A DNA stretch of 64,000 bases from assembly GCA_964234715.1 (NCBI GenBank), contig OZ174278.1. One strand, 5' to 3'. Shown in pieces: positions 8,710 through 54,573 of this stretch. This DNA is from Podarcis melisellensis. Taxonomy: Eukaryota. Each line of letters starts with the position of its first letter. Position 1 is the first letter of the stretch. The position numbers and the translations under genes were made by a program. The notes under the pieces were generated by a model, which saw nothing but the letters and a program-made list of their open reading frames with translations, was not told where the DNA came from and ran no database searches.

Positions 8710-10173
8710 GCGTCCTAGATTTAGGTAGCCAGGGTATGAGGGTATCGTTGTAATACATTTTGTCATGAATTGACCATAACCTTATGTAGGCCTGAGTAGT
8801 CTCAGTTCATGCTCTTTGCAGTACGTCTCCAGAAGCTGATGGATCCTTTGGCGTACAGAATTATTTGGAAGATTTATCCATTGACACTAAAGGTCACTCT
8901 GGTGACAGAATGATTGATATATGAAATCAAAAGTTGAGTATGGCTACAATGCTGTGGCAGCTAGGCATTCTCTTCTCACACTTTTGTAAGGTGCTACTCC
9001 TTGGTAACTAAATTGCTAAGAAACTTATAGCAGCAGGAAAAGCAACTGAGGGCAAGCAGTGTCAGATTCAGGCCAAATCAAACTAAGCACAACACAAATA
9101 TCATTTGAAGGTCATGCCATGGGAGTGAAACAAATGCCATGCCATCTGGTGAAGCTCTTCTGCGTAGGCAAGGGGTTGTTGCCCTTTCTGGTTGGTCACT
9201 TATGTGAACTAACTGCAGTTTGTTATGGACTTGCTTTGCAAGGCATTTGCAGAAAAACAACATTGTCTTCAATCTGATCTGGACACTGCTACTACATGAT
9301 AGTATCCAAACAGAGGCACTGAAAGTATCCTCTTATTTGTCCGATGCCAACATGGTGTATGGGAAAACGTTAGCAACCATTTACACTAAAAGGAAGAGCA
9401 GGTTGTTGAATGGGATTACCAATACATTTTTAAATTAGAGAAAGCTGCTGCTGCCTCAGATGACAGCAATAATAAAAGCCCTCTGAAGGCTAGTGTATAA
9501 GCAGATAATTTATACAGCTACTATCTAGTGTCTAATCTCACTATTATTTTAAAGATGGTGGGGAAAAATGGTTGCTGAATCACACAACTCTCCCCAATCA
9601 ATTTGTTTGGTTTAGTAGACCTGGCAGTCTAGCCAAGGAAGGGCAAATGCAACACCATTTTCAACCATAAATTTCTCATGGATTGTCCACAGCACTTGTT
9701 CAAAATATCAATGAAAAAACGTCATGGCAGCACTCATCTGCGTCTTCACTGAATTGTTGATAGAAATGATTATGGAAGGCATATTTTGGTTTGTGGGGCG
9801 TCATATCCAATGGAATGGGTGTTCACCTTGTTATGAGACATGGTAAACACCCATTCCGTTGGAAACGACGCTCCACTTCCAAAACTACACTTCAGGTAAG
9901 ACCAATTTTTCTTTTCTTTGTCACAAAGAGGCTGCCTGAATAAGTTCCACAGGGACTGATCTTATCACTGCAGTGTTACCACCACTTACCTCTCCCAGGA
10001 CTAGTCTCAGGATATATGTGCATGTTCTTGCTATAACAGTGTATGTGTGTTTTGAGCACTAGACTGAATGACCAATTTAATTGACTAAATCAAACACCTT
10101 TTTTTGCCAGAAAAAAGGGAACAAATGTTTCAAATCGTATGCACATTTTGACAGACCAATTTATTTTAAATTA

Positions 10174-15859: not shown

Positions 15860-15995
15860 CAGTGATGGCCAAACTTGGCCCTCCAGCTGTTTTGGGACTA
15901 CAACTCCCATCATCCCTAGCTAGCAGGACCAGAGGTCATGGATGATGGGAATTGTAGTCCCCAAACAGCTGGAGGGCCAAGTTTGGCCGTCACTG
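15860..15995. mobile_element. 136-bp palindromic hAT MITE
   Basis: Long inverted arms with CTACAACTCCCATCATCC core; 8-bp TSD TGCTAAAC. Confidence 0.88.
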
Positions 15996-16448: not shown

Positions 16449-16796
16449 TAGAAGACATATCTTTATACTCCTGATGGGGCATATAATACATGACAAAGTT
16501 GTCAAAAAAGAAAACTCAACTTCTTTTCAATACTTCTGTAGTAAAACAACTAACTTACATTATAGAAAAAAGGACTGAGGCAAAAGTACAGGACTCTGAT
16601 ATTTTAGGTTGAGAATATTCAGTTGGGTTTAATAATTTCCCCAACAATAAGTAAAATATGTCTAACACCATATTAGATTGCAACAGGTCAATAGCTTCTT
16701 GTGTTACAAAACAACAGAGGGCATGAATGGCTTCCTCCTACATTTCGGCTTACACAGTTCTGCCTGGATCTGAGAATATTAATGCATGCATATGTA

Positions 16797-16876
16797 TGTT
16801 TTGGGACTACAATTCCCACCATCCCTAGCTAACAGAACCAGAGGTCAGGGATGATGGGAATTTTAGTCCCAAAACA
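16797..16876. mobile_element. Central fragment of the same hAT MITE family
   Basis: TGTTTTGGGACTAC...TAGTCCCAAAACA. Confidence 0.75.
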
Positions 16877-17135
16877 CACACACATACACACACAACAGGG
16901 GCAGCTGCATATTTTCCTCAAAAGAGCTCAACCATCTATTGATATGAGAAGGAGTAGTTTCAGTCAAGAAGCGCTATCAATGAGGAGATCTAGCAGTCTT
17001 TATTGTTGTGGGTCCCATATTTCGTATTCTTTGCCTAGGGAAGTCTGCCTAATCACCAATAATTTGCCTTCTAGGAAATATTGTAAGATCATCCTTTAAG
17101 GAAAAATGTTCGGACTCTATGATTTTCAAAATAAA

Positions 17136-18752: not shown

Positions 18753-18886
18753 GGGCCTTTCTCAACCTTGGGTCCCCAGATGTTGTTGGACTTCAACTCC
18801 CATCATTCCTAGTTAGCAGAACCAGTGGTCAGGGATGATGGGAGTTGTAGCCCCACGTCTGGGGACCCAATGGTTGAGAAAGACTG
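18753..18886. mobile_element. Palindromic hAT MITE
   Basis: Same core; 8-bp TSD CTCTAGAT. Confidence 0.85.
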
Positions 18887-37602: not shown

Positions 37603-37738
37603 AAGTGTTTCTCAAACTTGGGTCGCCATTTACTGTTGGACTACAATTCCCATCATCCCTAGCTAGCAAGACCAGTGGTCAGGGATGATGAGAGCTGTAG
37701 TCCAACAACAGCTGGGGACCCAAGTTTGAGAAACACTT
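37603..37738. mobile_element. Palindromic hAT MITE
   Basis: AAGTGTTTCTCAAACTTGGGTC / GACCCAAGTTTGAGAAACACTT termini; same core. Confidence 0.82.
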
Positions 37739-42299: not shown

Positions 42300-43100
42300 A
42301 TTCATTAATTGAAGTACTTGCATACCACTTTTTATCCAGAAAAAGATCACAAAGAGGTTTACAAAAAAATCAATAATACAATATAAACAATAAACTTTAA
42401 AATAAATAACTGAAATAAAAACAGTGGGACATCCTACAATATCAAATTATCATAAAACCTACAGAATCAGACAGCATTAAAATGTAAAGATCCATAGATG
42501 AGAACAGATACCGTACTTTTTGCTCTATAAGACTCACTTTTTCCCTCCTAAAAAGTATGGGGAAATGTGTGTGCATCTTGTGGAGCGAATGCAGGCTGCA
42601 CAGCTATCACAGAAGCCAGAACAGCAAGAGGGATTGCTGCTTTCACTGCGCAGCGATCCCTCTTGCTGCTCTGGCTTCTGAGATTCAGAATATTTTTTTA
42701 ACTAGTTTTCCTCCTCCAAAAACTAGGTGCGTCTTGTGGTCTGGTGCATCTTATAGAGCGAAAAATACAGTAATTGTGTCCACCATAAGCCTGAGCAAGT
42801 TTTAAATGGTGACAGAAGCTCATCAAGGATGTAGCTGTCTGTGCTAATAGGGGGAAAGTGTTTCATAATTGGGGTGCCAGCACTGAGAAGACCCTATCCT
42901 ATGTCCCCACACTGTGAATAACATTAACATGAGGGAGAAAAAGCAGGACCACAGGCACTGTTCTCAAAGCCTCAACAGGTTGGTGCTGGAAGAGGAATTC
43001 TCTCAGATACCCAAATCCCAAGTTGTTCAGAGCTTTATACATTATCAAAAGCACTTTTACTTGAGTTAACTGAACTAATAGGTTGCCAGAGCACTTGCTA
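42300..43100 (-). mobile_element. L2-like 3' fragment split by a MITE
   Basis: KVLLIMYKALNNLGFGYLREFL on the minus strand; ends approximate. Confidence 0.65.
42511..42770. mobile_element. Tc1/mariner-superfamily MITE with CCGTA-type TIRs
   Basis: TA|CCGTACTTTTTGCTCTATAAGA / TCTTATAGAGCGAAAAATACAG|TA; internal hairpin. Confidence 0.83.
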
Positions 43101-49266: not shown

Positions 49267-50719
49267 TTAATTTAAAAAGACAAAGTTTTGTATAAACAAA
49301 ACATTATGACAACAGAAAATAGGCTTATGTCTTTACAACAATCACAAGCACCATATAAATGGCAAAGTATTCTTGGTGTAGGACTTCAACAGAGTTAGCT
49401 AGGCTTTAGGTATTCACAAAAATACAACACACATTTGGTAATGGTGTTAAGGCTAGAAAGAATGTCAGTTGACATTAATGGATGCATCAGCTGAATAGAG
49501 CCATTGTTTTGGCATGTGATATCGGGGCAGCTGAAAGCGGGAATTTGTTGAGAAAGTAATTTTGTTATTCTGGTAAATTTCTGTTCTACCACCAAGGAGT
49601 GAAGCACCCAAAACCTGTTAGATTTCAATCCAGGGATGGCAAGCCTCCTTCTGATGTCATATGTGAGGTCATGTTTAGGGTAGGGAGACATACATTGAAT
49701 TGGCTACACAACTGAGCACCCTCTGGCAAACTCAATCCTGCAGCCTATCCCTGTAGAAAGCAGGGCTGAAGTTAGCTGATGGGCAGTAAATTCAATCCTA
49801 CTGGATTGTCTGTCTGTCTGAAATCCCTGTAGGGAACTCAATTGCAAAGCTGGTCTTTGTAGATAGCAGCTTGCCACTTTGCTGGCAACTCCCATCATGT
49901 TGCGGTTTGCAAGTGCCTGAGAACCAGGTGGTTGGTGGGTGCTTGGGACATGTTGCACAAGGAACTTTGACAACCCACCCGTCAACTGTCTAGTATCAGG
50001 TGGTTTCTTGCCCACCTGTTAAAGATGGCCTATGGGACCAAGGAATGATAACGATCTGGCCCCTTGAGTCAAAAAGGTTTCCCACTCCTGTTCTAATCCC
50101 TCACAAGAGTTTCACTGAGTTTGTTATTCAACTTAACCGGATTATTCTTCCACTAGTCTGGTTTAGTTTTCTGTGTAGCACAAGCTCAACCAATGCGGAA
50201 TATGTTCACGAGGTTAAGGAAGATTCTGTGTAAATAGTCAGCCTAACCTATGTTTTCCAGAGGTATCTGGCTATTTCATTATTGGCATAAATACGACCGT
50301 TCACAACAAGGGAATGGCTACTTTGTTAGGTTTCCCTACACTGATGGTATGGTGTATTTATAAAAATAGGTTTAGATGACAAATGGGACAGCACATTTAT
50401 GCAATGTAGGGGCCCACTGGTCACAAGAAATGCTGCATGTAAACATATTTCAGGTAACATCTTATCAAATTTTCTTAATGCCAAGAACCTCAAAAAAAGA
50501 GAATAAAGTTAAAACACAGATTTTTATTTTCATTTGTTTGTGGACTTGTGTGTTTTTGTGATCAACATAACACACTCAACCAACAGAAGCGTTAATTTCA
50601 ATACAATAAAAGTCAATTAGCCTATTGCCTATTTTTGTAGAGAAGTCTTTAACTGAACTTTAGGAGCAAAAATAGAAATTTCTGTGTCAACTTGCATACC
50701 ACACTTCTGCTACCTGCAG

Positions 50720-51005
50720 CTAGTGCAAAAGGCATTGGTTCCACTGCTTACTGGGACCTCTTGAAGATACCATCTCATCAGGAGGTCTGTTCCAAACAAT
50801 GTAGAAATCAGGCCTTTAGTGTGGTGGCACCTATTCTTTGGGGCTCCTTCCTATTACATATCAAAGAGGCACTGTCCCTATTATCTGGTGCAAAAACAGA
50901 ATTTACTAAAACAAGCAACACACTTGTTTTGAGCTGCAAAACTCTTGCAAAATTCTATTTGCATGAATTCTTCTGTACCTTCTTTAAAATAAATAAATAA
51001 ATGAA
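50720..51005 (+). mobile_element. L2-like 3' remnant
   Basis: AGGCCTTTAGTGTGGTGGCACC (AFSVVAP.LW) motif followed by (AATA)n. Confidence 0.55.
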
Positions 51006-51012
51006 TGTTTCA

Positions 51013-51176
51013 TTTTGTCAACGTTTGCTAGGTGTAAAACAGTAAGGGGTACTACTGAATCAAACATAGTCAAAATGAGAACTTGTTGTGAAAAGGTACA
51101 CAACAAGTTCTCATTTTGACTATGTTTGATTCAGTAGTACCCCTTACTGTTTTACACCTAGCAAACGTTGACAAAA
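51013..51176. repeat. Perfect inverted repeat: 78-bp arms, 8-nt loop
   Basis: 51013-51090 is the exact reverse complement of 51099-51176. Confidence 0.97.
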
Positions 51177-51999
51177 CCAGTGCATATTTTGTCCATCCAC
51201 TCCTGTCAATCACATCTAACCTATCCGCTGCAAAATTCACCACACACAGACAGTGATCTCATTTATCTCAGCTGCCCGTCCTTAGGTTGCCAAAATAGCA
51301 CGATCATGCACAAAGAGGAGGTATCAGCAGACTTTGGGGAACTACAAGTTTTGCAGAGGCACGAAAAATATTTAGGGGAGGGAAGTTGCATTCTGAGGTG
51401 GACATACCATTATCGATTTGACATTTTATTTAGACATTATAACAACAATCAGAGGAATAGCTTAAATGGAAGATTGAAGTATGAAATTTGACAGCATTAC
51501 TTAGTGCCGGGAAAAGGATTGTAGGCAATATTTCTTTCACCGAAAAAGTAATTGTCTCTCAAAAATCATTAAAACATTGGAAGTAGGTCCAGGAAAACAC
51601 ACTACCCAACCACCCTGTAAAATATCCCTTTCTGCTGCCTTAACTCTGATTTAGCTTTGCCTCATTAGCAAGCTAAAATCATGGTTAGAGCTAACTGGGA
51701 TTTCTTTTTAAATGTGCTTTTGTTTTCAGCTATGGCAGCTCTCTTATTAGGATGTGTTTCTGCGTTCCCCTGTATTTAGTGCTCATATTTTGTCCTCCAC
51801 CATATCCCAATGTGTGTTTATATATACCTGCCATTCCCGCGCTGCATCTTCATGCATCAGAGATTACTATTACACATAAAAGCTCATCACCGTCCCCCAA
51901 TCCTCCTACAGATATCTGGAGGAAAGCACGAAAGACTAAAATAGCTGATGAAGCTGATTCTTACCAGTTTAAAACAACCCTAGTCACAACTTTCTAATA

Positions 52000-52086
52000 A
52001 GACAGACTTCCTTTCCTTCCTTCCTTCCTTAAACACAAGTTCTGAAAGCAGAATTCAGTAGAAAAGACTCCGTCACTAACCCAAAA
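52000..52086 (+). promoter_or_regulatory. Putative GPR34 promoter / 5' non-coding exon (5' boundary approximate)
   Basis: Donor GTGAGT at 52087; ETS/PU.1-like ACTTCCTTTC at 52006; matching acceptor CATTTTATTCCAG ending 53413, 47 nt before the ATG. Confidence 0.45.
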
Positions 52087-53460
52087 GTGAGTATTTCCTT
52101 TTATTATAGTTCAATTTTTCTCATATGTTAAGTGTAGAAAAATAGTTTTATATTTCTAGTGCAACTTTCTTGACAGATGAGAAAGCACTTTTCTCAAGAA
52201 CATATTCTACTTTTCTTTCGCATTTTTTTCGTTCCTTTTAAAAAGGCAGAGAAATGTTAAGACTGCCACCTGGATAACATTCACAAGCAACTTTATCAAA
52301 GTAGTAGCATGTATTTGAAACTAAAGCCAGTTTAGGATTTGCTGCTGAGGAAGTGTGAATATAGCACAACCTCATTCATGGCTATTGAGGAGTAAGCTCC
52401 TCTGAGCTTAATGCTGCTTGCTTCTATTAAGAGAGAGAGAGAGAACATGAACACACACACACACACACACACAGAGAGAGAATAAATATATAAAATGTGA
52501 TAGAAATATATAAAATGTGACACACTAGTAAAATTACAAATCTAAATCTTTGAAGGTTCATGTTTTCATTTTCAACAAGGAAATCATACTCTAAACTACA
52601 AACACAAAGTAGAATTTGATTTCCCATTTTGAATCTACCCTTAAATAATCTGAATCTGTTTTTATGGTGACAAAGTCATTTTGGAATGTCACTTTATTAT
52701 GGGCTCAGGTATCAACATGCAAATATTTATGCAGGAACTCTCAATCAAGTTAATGCATGGGGAAATTCTCATAGCCACAGATCAAGCATATTGCCAGAAA
52801 TCATCTGTCAGCTTCCTAACAAGATCTTTGTTCCATTTCTAACATTTCTTTGCCTAAACCAGGTGTGGCACCCATGGCTCTCCAGATACTGTCGGGCTCC
52901 CATCAGCCTCAGCCACCACAGACAGTGGGGAATTCCAAATAATTATATTTGGTATGTAAACAAGATCTGCTTCTTACATTCCTAAGATACGACTTAGCTA
53001 ATATCAAGGCACATTTTGTATTTTTGATTTTTTTTAAACCACTGTTTGTTTGTTTGTTTTTAATGTGCCAAAGAAGAATTTATGTACTATTTGTTTATCA
53101 CCACTTGTTATCAATGCAATCATCTAAGCACTGGGGATACTGGATGGATATCAGATTTTATAGGAAGCCTACTTTTTGTTCTTTCCTTACTTTAAAAAAT
53201 GAGGAGAAATAAAAGGAGCAAAATGTTTTCATAAACAAAGCAGCTATAATTGCAAACTTGTTCATAAATAGTTTCTGGGCGAAGACCCTATTTTGCTGAT
53301 TTTATGCATGACTAAAATAAGGCTTATGACAGAAAAGCTTCTGAGTTTGCTTGAAAAGTTAATCAAGTTAATTCCACACTGTAAATGTTGCACTGTCTTC
53401 CATTTTATTCCAGGCAAAGTGTAAGTGAAGATTTACTAAGAATTTTGACTTCCATACCGT

Positions 53461-54573
53461 ATGCACAAGAAAACCCCAGCGAAGAACATGAATTTTTCAC
53501 TTGCTGAAAATGAAACTGGAAAAAACTCCACAGAAATGCCTGTTACTTACTGTGATACGGAAGAGAAATCACTGTCTTTAACTCTACTATTTTCATATTC
53601 GGTCATTTTTGTAATTGGATTGGTTGGCAATATTACTGCCCTGTATGTTTTTCTGGGCATTCCTTGCAAGAAGAACTCTATCCATGTTTATTTGCTTAAT
53701 GTTGCCATCGCAGACCTCCTACTGATCTTTTGTCTCCCTTTCCGAATATACTATCACATAGCCCAGAACAAGTGGCTGTTGGGCTTGATTTTTTGCAAGA
53801 TTATAGGAAACTTATTTTATATGAACATGTACATCAGCATCGTACTGCTAGGGCTTATTAGTTGGGACCGTTATGTAAAAATTAACAAATCTATACAACG
53901 CCCTAGAGTGTTAACAGCAAGACGAAGCGTATATTTGTGTTGTACGCTGTGGACAGTTGCAATAATGGGATTTATACTGATGGTTGTTCAGTCTACCAGG
54001 AAGGAAGATAAACATTCATCAAAATGTTTCCATTACAGAGAAAAGCGAAATGCAAAAGTGGAAGCAGGTGTTAATTATATTCTTGTTATAATATTTTGGA
54101 TTGTTTTCATTCTACTGATTCTGTCATATGTTAAAATTGCAAACAATCTTCTGAAAATTTCTAAGAAGAGAACAAGTTTTCCTAATACTAGAACATATGT
54201 TGCCATTGCAAGGAAATCTTTCATAGTACTTATCATTTTCACATTATGCTTTGTTCCTTATCATATATTCAGATTAATTTATATCACTTCACAACTACAA
54301 AAAACCTCTTGTTACTGGCAACAGATCATTCACAAATACAATGAGATTACACTAGTCTTCTCATCATTTAACAGCTGCTTAGATCCAGTTATGTATTTCT
54401 TAATGTCCAGAAGTGTCCGGAAAACTGTACTTCAACTGATTTGTAAGCGACTTCATGTGGATTCAAGTGTGAATGAGAGTACTTCAGAGACAAAACAAGG
54501 ACATTCTTTTCAAGATAATTCAGAAATCCCAAGTCACCATTCTAGAATGCATCTTAATAAGATTAACAATTAA
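53461..54573 (+). CDS. GPR34: G protein-coupled receptor 34 (lysophosphatidylserine receptor, P2Y-like class A GPCR), nested antisense in CASK intron 5
   Basis: Intronless 370-aa ORF with seven hydrophobic segments; [41 protein letters not shown], CFVPYHxxR and [10 protein letters not shown] motifs match GPR34; position matches the known CASK-intron synteny. Confidence 0.96.

What the first reader, a model, noticed from the sequence alone, without database searches (positions are those of the whole stretch)
51013..51176. Perfect 164-bp palindrome (78-bp arms, 8-nt loop) just upstream of the nested GPR34 gene
Seen: the two arms are exact reverse complements, with no TSD and no resemblance to the MITE families in the window, whose arms are all imperfect. 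It directly follows the (AATA)n tail of an L2-like remnant and lies about 0.9 kb before the putative GPR34 first-exon donor. Known: long near-spacerless palindromes extrude cruciforms, are unstable, and give long dsRNA (ADAR/Dicer substrate) when transcribed; this one lies within the CASK pre-mRNA. Inference: a very recent fold-back or template-switch duplication, possibly polymorphic, that could affect GPR34 regulation or produce hairpin RNA.
Basis: partly seen in the sequence, partly recalled or inferred. Interest (0 to 1): 0.7.

Follow-up and report, generated by a model that had tools for sequence, protein, structure and literature searches.

The report
Young inverted duplication forming perfect palindrome
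A 78-base stretch of unique intron DNA upstream of the lizard GPR34 gene was recently copied backwards next to itself, giving a flawless 164-base hairpin-forming palindrome that another lizard of the same species and two related species lack. It is a clean, unusually long example of a known copying error, with no shown function.

Summary
Arms 51013-51090 and 51099-51176 are exact reverse complements, separated by 8 nt. The next longest perfect short-spacer inverted repeat in the 64 kb has 10-nt arms.

It is not an assembly artefact. Contigs from the source sample's own run end exactly 30 nt inside each arm, which is the break expected for a k=31 graph at a true hairpin.

It is not a MITE or a Penelope-like palindrome:
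- The arm is single-copy in four lizard genomes.
- There is no target-site duplication.
- There is no hammerhead ribozyme.

An independent conspecific, a sister species and a more distant species each have one unbroken contig across the site. Each holds only the right arm, preceded by 77-81 other letters. So the left arm plus loop is a derived inverted copy, polymorphic within the species or private to the reference lineage.

The best mechanism is a short-range replication template switch. The proposed effects on GPR34 and on dsRNA are untested.

This is a known kind of event, at the long end of its size range, and of modest interest.

The parts
51099..51176 (+). Right arm: the ancestral, single-copy 78-nt sequence that served as template
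   Evidence: In runs X5 (conspecific), X4 and X8 (other species) it lies on one contig, contiguous with the right flank. It shows no differences in X5 and X8; one difference in X4's piece is not located. Depth equals that single contig (tables 2, 3, 8).
51013..51090 (+). Left arm: the derived exact reverse-complement copy of 51099-51176
   Evidence: 100% complementary. Absent from the spanning contigs of X5, X4 and X8. Joined to the left flank in the source run X2 (record 1 covers 50500-51042 with no differences).
51091..51098 (+). 8-nt spacer AAAAGGTA, the loop of the hairpin; not the ancestral sequence next to the right arm
   Evidence: Alignments of the X5, X4 and X8 contigs all start exactly at 51099 (table 8). 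Bin depths in X2 fit a loop unitig spanning 51061-51128 (table 2; note).
50978..51012 (+). Low-complexity left border including (AAAT)5 at 50987-51006, where the new copy was joined
   Evidence: Tandem Repeats Finder. Read laying treats 50978-51015 as a repeat. The letters between the aligned pieces number 77, 77 and 81 in the other genomes, a difference of one 4-nt unit.
51170..51193 (+). Native short inverted repeat GACAAAA / TTTTGTC (10-nt gap) at the outer border of the copied segment. The 8-mer ATTTTGTC also stands at the left junction 51012-51019. This is possible microhomology and chance is not excluded.
   Evidence: k-mer script.
53461..54573 (+). Intact GPR34 coding ORF (370 aa), the nearest gene; context only
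   Evidence: the ORF listing; phmmer against PDB, E = 7.5e-140 to human GPR34.

Best explanation
The palindrome is a real and evolutionarily young structural variant. A unique 78-bp piece of intron DNA (now the right arm) was copied in reverse-complement orientation immediately to its left. The copy replaced roughly 40 bp of ancestral sequence and left an 8-nt spacer. The most likely mechanism is a short-range template switch during DNA synthesis. The nascent strand left its template at about 51012, copied the opposite or nascent strand backwards from 51176 to 51099 and perhaps 8 letters further, and then returned to the original template at 51099. That would make the loop an inverted copy of the ancestral neighbouring letters. 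What is shown: the structure, its presence in the source sample's reads, its single-copy status, and its absence from a conspecific and two relatives. What is inferred: the mechanism, the switch points and the zygosity. It probably has no function. Any consequences would be those of a 78-bp perfect hairpin: cruciform or hairpin formation at replication, and a long intronic dsRNA stem on either strand.
For: The inverted repeat is exact and has sharp borders. In source run X2 the contigs end at 51042 and start at 51147, exactly k-1 = 30 nt into each arm, and four contigs match at 99% or more. That is the pattern expected for a true hairpin in a k=31 graph. In X5 (same species, other sample and study), X4 and X8, one contig aligns to 50500-50977 and then to 51099-51700, with 77, 77 and 81 letters between against 121 in the window. 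An unbroken k=31 contig could not cross a 78-nt perfect inverted repeat, so the left arm is truly absent there (table 8). The right arm is identical in X5 and X8: all 7 differences of each piece are listed, and all lie outside 51099-51176 (table 3). Nothing else in the four genomes matches the arm at 80% or more, whereas the repeat at 50746-50868 piles up more than 100-fold (table 2). Template-switch mutations of this form are documented in humans, with 2->3 fragments up to 90 bp in complex sequence and up to 318 bp overall. They are known to create perfect hairpins in one step and to invert spacers (PMC8604942 abstract).
Against: The 77-81 ancestral letters were never seen, so the switch points, the origin of the 8-nt loop and any microhomology are not established. 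No microhomology is visible at the outer junction in the derived sequence. The depths of the arm and loop unitigs in X2 (88.6 and 65) fit neither a simple homozygote nor a simple heterozygote. X1-X3 come from the same sample as the assembly, so support for the presence of the palindrome is not independent of that individual. The 'same species' status of X5 rests on a coded label.
Confidence: 0.7

Rival explanations
1. Double-strand-break repair rather than replication. A break in the ancestral ~40 bp left of the arm was resected, the 3' tail folded back or invaded the sister strand and was extended for 78 nt, and the end was then rejoined by end joining. The 8-nt loop would be filler, or the product of a later rearrangement at the centre.
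For: The event is a net replacement (about 40 bp lost, 86 bp gained). The loop is not the ancestral neighbour of the arm, and no microhomology is seen at the outer junction. Fold-back priming at breaks is a documented route to inverted duplications (PMC10622511).
Against: Fold-back priming at a break normally gives hairpin-capped ends and very large palindromic duplications, not a 78-bp copy that returns to the original template. A single switch-and-return with spacer inversion explains all letters without filler.
Confidence: 0.18
2. The palindrome is ancestral, and the other three genomes share a rearranged, one-armed allele. The hairpin would have been lost in them, not gained in the reference.
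For: Long palindromes are prone to deletion. Perfect identity of 78-nt arms alone does not prove extreme youth.
Against: The one-armed state occurs in a conspecific, a sister species and a species about 1.7% diverged. That would require loss in all three, or deep lineage sorting, with the reference alone keeping the palindrome. Those genomes also carry about 40 other letters in place of the arm, which is not a simple arm deletion.
Confidence: 0.05
3. Artefact of sequencing or assembly of the reference individual: a chimeric or fold-back read, or a polishing error.
For: All runs that hold the palindrome (X1-X3) come from the assembly's own sample. The arm and loop depths are odd.
Against: Both flank/arm junctions lie in long contigs at full depth with no differences, a separate loop unitig exists, and no ancestral-type branch breaks the contig at 51012. 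Read-level chimeras occur at random positions and do not reach consensus.
Confidence: 0.04
4. A young palindromic MITE, foldback transposon or Penelope-like inverted insertion, as noted elsewhere in this genome.
For: The first-stage notes list many perfect Penelope-type palindromes in this genome. The window also holds MITE-like hairpins.
Against: Half of the 'element' (the right arm) is ancestral unique sequence present in the relatives. The arm is single-copy in four genomes at 80% likeness or more. There is no target-site duplication. There is no hammerhead or other family hit at gathering score.
Confidence: 0.02

Closest known systems
Short-range template-switch mutations (four-point model; Loytynoja & Goldman 2017, PMC5453318; Loytynoja 2022, doi 10.1101/2021.11.26.470150; Monttinen et al. 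2023, PMC10710096)
   Same: A derived segment is the exact reverse complement of adjacent sequence. It replaces a short ancestral stretch, creates a perfect hairpin in one step, segregates within a species and lies in an intron.
   Different: The copied fragment of 78 nt (or 86 nt with the loop) is at the long end: the longest human case in complex sequence is 90 bp. There is no pre-existing near-palindrome that I could show, and the switch points were not reconstructed.
Quasi-palindrome correction and spacer inversion by inter-strand switching (Ripley model; yeast cases in PMC8604942)
   Same: It would explain a loop that is the inverted copy of the ancestral spacer, and a perfect arm pair.
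   Different: The classic model needs an imperfect inverted repeat beforehand. Here the ancestral left partner appears to be absent (about 40 unrelated letters).
Fold-back inverted duplications at double-strand breaks (PMC10622511; review PMC7999016)
   Same: An inverted duplication joined through a short spacer next to the original.
   Different: Those events give kilobase- to chromosome-scale palindromes from hairpin-capped ends. This one is a 78-bp local copy with both flanks intact.
Palindromic MITEs and Penelope-like inverted dimers of this genome
   Same: A perfect or near-perfect hairpin of 100-300 bp in an intron.
   Different: This one is single-copy, has no target-site duplication, no terminal motifs and no hammerhead, and one arm is ancestral host sequence.
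Human palindromic AT-rich repeats (PATRRs) and other fragile palindromes
   Same: A polymorphic, cruciform-capable, nearly spacerless palindrome.
   Different: PATRRs are several hundred bp long and very AT-rich. This one is 164 bp with 36% GC in the arm, and no breakage or translocation data exist.

Membership tests
Template-switch mutation product (four-point model) | The derived segment is an exact reverse complement of nearby sequence on the same molecule | tested here: met
   78/78 complementary, 8 nt apart
Template-switch mutation product (four-point model) | The ancestral or outgroup state lacks the inverted copy but has the source (2->3) region | tested here: met
   X5, X4 and X8 contigs hold only 51099-51176, contiguous with the right flank (table 8)
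Template-switch mutation product (four-point model) | One switch-and-return event converts the ancestral allele into the derived allele (points 1-4 reconstructable) | tested here: inconclusive
MITE / foldback DNA transposon | Multiple copies in the genome | tested here: not met
   Depth over the arm equals one contig in X5, X4 and X8 at 80% likeness or more. There is no second copy in the window.
MITE / foldback DNA transposon | Target-site duplication flanking the terminal inverted repeats, and an empty site lacking the whole element | tested here: not met
   Flanks ...GTTTCA and CCAGTG... share no repeat. The 'empty' site still holds one arm.
Penelope-like element palindrome | Hammerhead ribozyme / pseudo-LTR sequence, repeated in the genome | tested here: not met
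   Rfam scan at E<=1 finds no hammerhead. The arm is single-copy.
Annotated miRNA / hairpin-RNA gene | Match to a curated family at gathering score | tested here: not met
   There are only sub-threshold hits to about ten unrelated miRNA models on both strands (best 66 bits against a cut-off of 130). That is generic scoring of a perfect stem.
Annotated miRNA / hairpin-RNA gene | Transcription and processing into small RNAs | not testable with these tools
   No RNA run holds the stretch

The most novel reading that the evidence does not exclude
The palindrome is a stably inherited allele, homozygous in the reference animal. Its 78-bp perfect stem, transcribed within CASK and/or a GPR34 5' transcript, would be processed into small RNAs or heavily A-to-I edited. 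That would be a newborn hairpin-RNA locus caught while still polymorphic. Together with the unchecked fold-back insertion noted in the neighbouring NYX intron, it could also signal an unusually active template-switch process in this lizard lineage.
Probability: 0.07. Interest if true: 0.7.

Novelty: new member of a known kind. Interest (0 to 1): 0.35.

Why it matters
This is a clean natural example, in a reptile, of a single mutational event creating a long perfect hairpin from unique sequence, with the before and after states both present in living animals. Such cases support the view that template switching supplies ready-made stems for new RNA hairpins. They also offer a natural test of how long a nearly spacerless palindrome can be and still be inherited in a vertebrate. 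It changes no general picture: the mechanism and its products are already described in humans, apes, yeast and bacteria.

Tried and rejected
- **Ancestral junction through a called ORF.** I searched the protein collection with the 57-aa minus-strand ORF that runs through the right arm (51073-51243). No candidate was found. This is a blank, not evidence.
- **Depth decomposition for zygosity in the source run.** It gives an exact four-unitig fit, but the arm and loop depths (88.6 and 65) match neither zygosity. The tool warns against reading contig depth, so I left this open.
- **Templating of the loop from nearby sequence.** The 8-mer TGTACCTT at 50974-50981 is the reverse complement of 51093-51100. 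However, 39% of shuffles give such a hit, so I rejected it as evidence.
- **Inversion of the whole 121-nt segment 50978-51098.** Rejected, because the reverse complement of that segment does not continue like the right flank.
- **MITE, Penelope and miRNA membership.** All rejected.
- **Scans of metagenome and prokaryote collections for the arm.** Not run, because those collections do not hold lizard genomes.

Full report
**Observation**

The window holds, at exactly the stated coordinates, two 78-nt arms (51013-51090 and 51099-51176) that are perfect reverse complements. They are separated by AAAAGGTA.

- Complementarity ends abruptly at both outer borders, and no direct repeat flanks the structure.
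- The stretch folds as DNA at -94.7 kcal/mol (z = -26).
- As minus-strand RNA it folds at -146.1 kcal/mol (z = -23).
- In the whole 64 kb the next longest perfect inverted repeat with a spacer of 20 nt or less has 10-nt arms.
- The other long inverted repeats are imperfect (78-95%), and several share one MITE-like arm motif.
- The arm has no other match in the window beyond 13 nt.

**Context**

- The ORF at 53461-54573 (+) is GPR34, with E = 7.5e-140 to the human GPR34 structures. The palindrome lies 2.3 kb upstream of its start codon.
- First-stage notes place DDX3X, NYX and the 3' (guanylate-kinase) end of CASK before the window start.
- The peptide that another note claims for a CASK microexon reads on the minus strand.
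- This fits the mammalian arrangement, known to me, of GPR34 nested antisense in a CASK intron.
- I did not verify CASK exons myself, so 'inside the CASK pre-mRNA' is inference.
- (AAAT)5 at 50987-51006 ends 6 nt before the left arm.
- A high-copy repeat covers about 50746-50868 and another about 51320-51360 (table 2).

**Is it real?**

The look-up of sequencing runs found three runs of one sample that hold 98% of the words. That sample is most likely the one the assembly came from. It also found runs of other samples and species that hold 44-69%. I laid X2 (source sample), X5 (same species label, other sample and study), X4 (species B) and X8 (species E) on 50500-51700 at 80% likeness.

All four runs are Logan contigs built from 31-letter words. 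In such a graph a perfect hairpin must break the contigs 30 nt inside each arm, because the arm words of the two arms are the same canonical words. That is exactly what X2 shows:

- One contig covers 50500-51042 with no differences.
- Another covers 51147-51700 with no differences.
- Four contigs in all match at 99% or more.
- The bin depths between them are reproduced exactly by an arm unitig and a loop unitig spanning 51061-51128.

Both flank/arm junctions and the loop are therefore present in the reads of the source animal, and the main contig shows no competing branch at 51012. An assembly or polishing artefact is very unlikely.

The evidence does come from the same individual as the assembly. 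The arm and loop depths (88.6 and 65, against 88 for the flanks) fit neither simple zygosity, so zygosity stays open. The tool itself says contig depth should not be read.

**Is it a transposon?**

No.

- Over the right arm the depth in X5, X4 and X8 equals one single contig, whereas the neighbouring repeat at 50746-50868 collects more than a hundred times that (table 2).
- There is no target-site duplication.
- This genome has many perfect palindromes that first readers ascribe to Penelope-like elements with hammerhead ribozymes. I therefore scanned 50000-52200 against Rfam at E<=1. There is no hammerhead.
- The only hits are sub-threshold matches to about ten unrelated miRNA precursor models on both strands. 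That is what any perfect stem gives.

**Polarity**

In X5, X4 and X8 a single unbroken contig aligns to 50500-50977 and then to 51099-51700. It has 77, 77 and 81 letters between, against 121 in the window (table 8).

- A 31-word graph cannot run unbroken through a 78-nt perfect inverted repeat. These genomes therefore truly lack the left arm.
- The right arm is there, contiguous with the right flank. It is identical to the window in X5 and X8: all seven differences of each piece are listed, and all lie outside the arm (table 3).
- The window differs from X5 and X4 by about 0.9% and from X8 by about 1.7% over the laid stretch (my count from table 8).
- The 4-nt difference between 77 and 81 fits one (AAAT) unit. 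That suggests the low-complexity border is shared and that roughly 40 ancestral letters were replaced by the 86-nt 'left arm plus loop'.

A conspecific, a sister species and a more distant species all share the one-armed state. The palindrome is therefore derived on the reference animal's lineage, and is polymorphic within the species label or private to a population.

**Mechanism**

An exact reverse-complement copy placed next to its source, replacing a short ancestral stretch, is the signature of a short-range template-switch mutation.

- These events are described by the four-point model.
- They are known to create perfect hairpins in one step.
- They segregate in human populations, with copied fragments up to 90 bp in complex sequence and 318 bp overall.

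This event, at 78-86 nt, is at the long end but within range.

All three foreign contigs start to align exactly at 51099, so the 8 loop letters are not simply the ancestral neighbours of the arm. The most economical model is that the polymerase copied the other strand from 51176 back through 51099 and eight letters beyond, then returned at 51099. The loop would then be the inverted copy of the ancestral eight letters, a known outcome of inter-strand switching. This predicts TACCTTTT before the right arm in the ancestral allele. I could not test it:

- A search for a called ORF product crossing the junction was blank.

A native 7-bp inverted repeat (GACAAAA 51170-76 / TTTTGTC 51187-93) sits at the outer border of the copied segment. 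ATTTTGTC occurs both at the left junction and in the right flank. This may be microhomology, but short AT-rich matches are common here. A similar 8-mer match for the loop has a 39% chance expectation.

Break repair with fold-back synthesis remains a rival, with a confidence of about 0.2.

**What it does**

Nothing is shown. From established knowledge, longer arms, higher arm identity and shorter spacers make a palindrome more likely to form hairpins or cruciforms, to stall replication and to break. Transcribed in either direction, this one gives a 78-bp perfect RNA duplex, which is in principle a substrate for ADAR or Dicer. No RNA run holds the stretch. The most likely status is a neutral young variant.

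**Verdict**

- The functional suggestions are untested.
- The event belongs to a known class, so novelty is 'new member of a known kind' and interest is modest.
- The scan had noted this same stretch once more (s1-515028), but no follow-up existed.

Noticed in passing
window 15860-15995, 16793-16880, 18785-18856, 37603-37738: Four imperfect hairpins (83-95%) share the arm motif GGGACTACAAYTCCCATCATCC. They look like one MITE-like family in the CASK intron.
   Followed up: no
window 50746-50868 and 51320-51360: These are high-copy repeats. Hundreds of contigs in all four lizard runs match at 80-90%, with depth 30-100 times the flank (table 2).
   Followed up: partly
window 51202/51203: Species E (X8) carries 16 extra letters (CTGTGACAATACTCCT) that resemble the following 16 nt of the window. 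This suggests a small tandem duplication in X8 or a deletion in the window lineage. X4 lacks 19 nt somewhere in 51099-51301 (tables 4 and 8).
   Followed up: no
window 50992-51196, run X2: The depths of the collapsed arm unitig (88.6) and the loop unitig (65.0) fit neither a homozygous (about 177 / 88) nor a heterozygous (132 / 44) palindrome. Either the tool halves a contig that fits two places, or coverage is distorted at the hairpin.
   Followed up: partly
about 23.6 kb before the window start (note s1-505146): Another first-stage note describes a complex templated insertion with fold-back in the NYX intron nearby. If real, that would make two template-switch-type events within about 75 kb.
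   Followed up: no
window 9782-9887 and 42606-42684: Two further short-spacer hairpins (50-nt arms at 78%; 35-nt arms at 91%) do not carry the MITE motif above.
   Followed up: no
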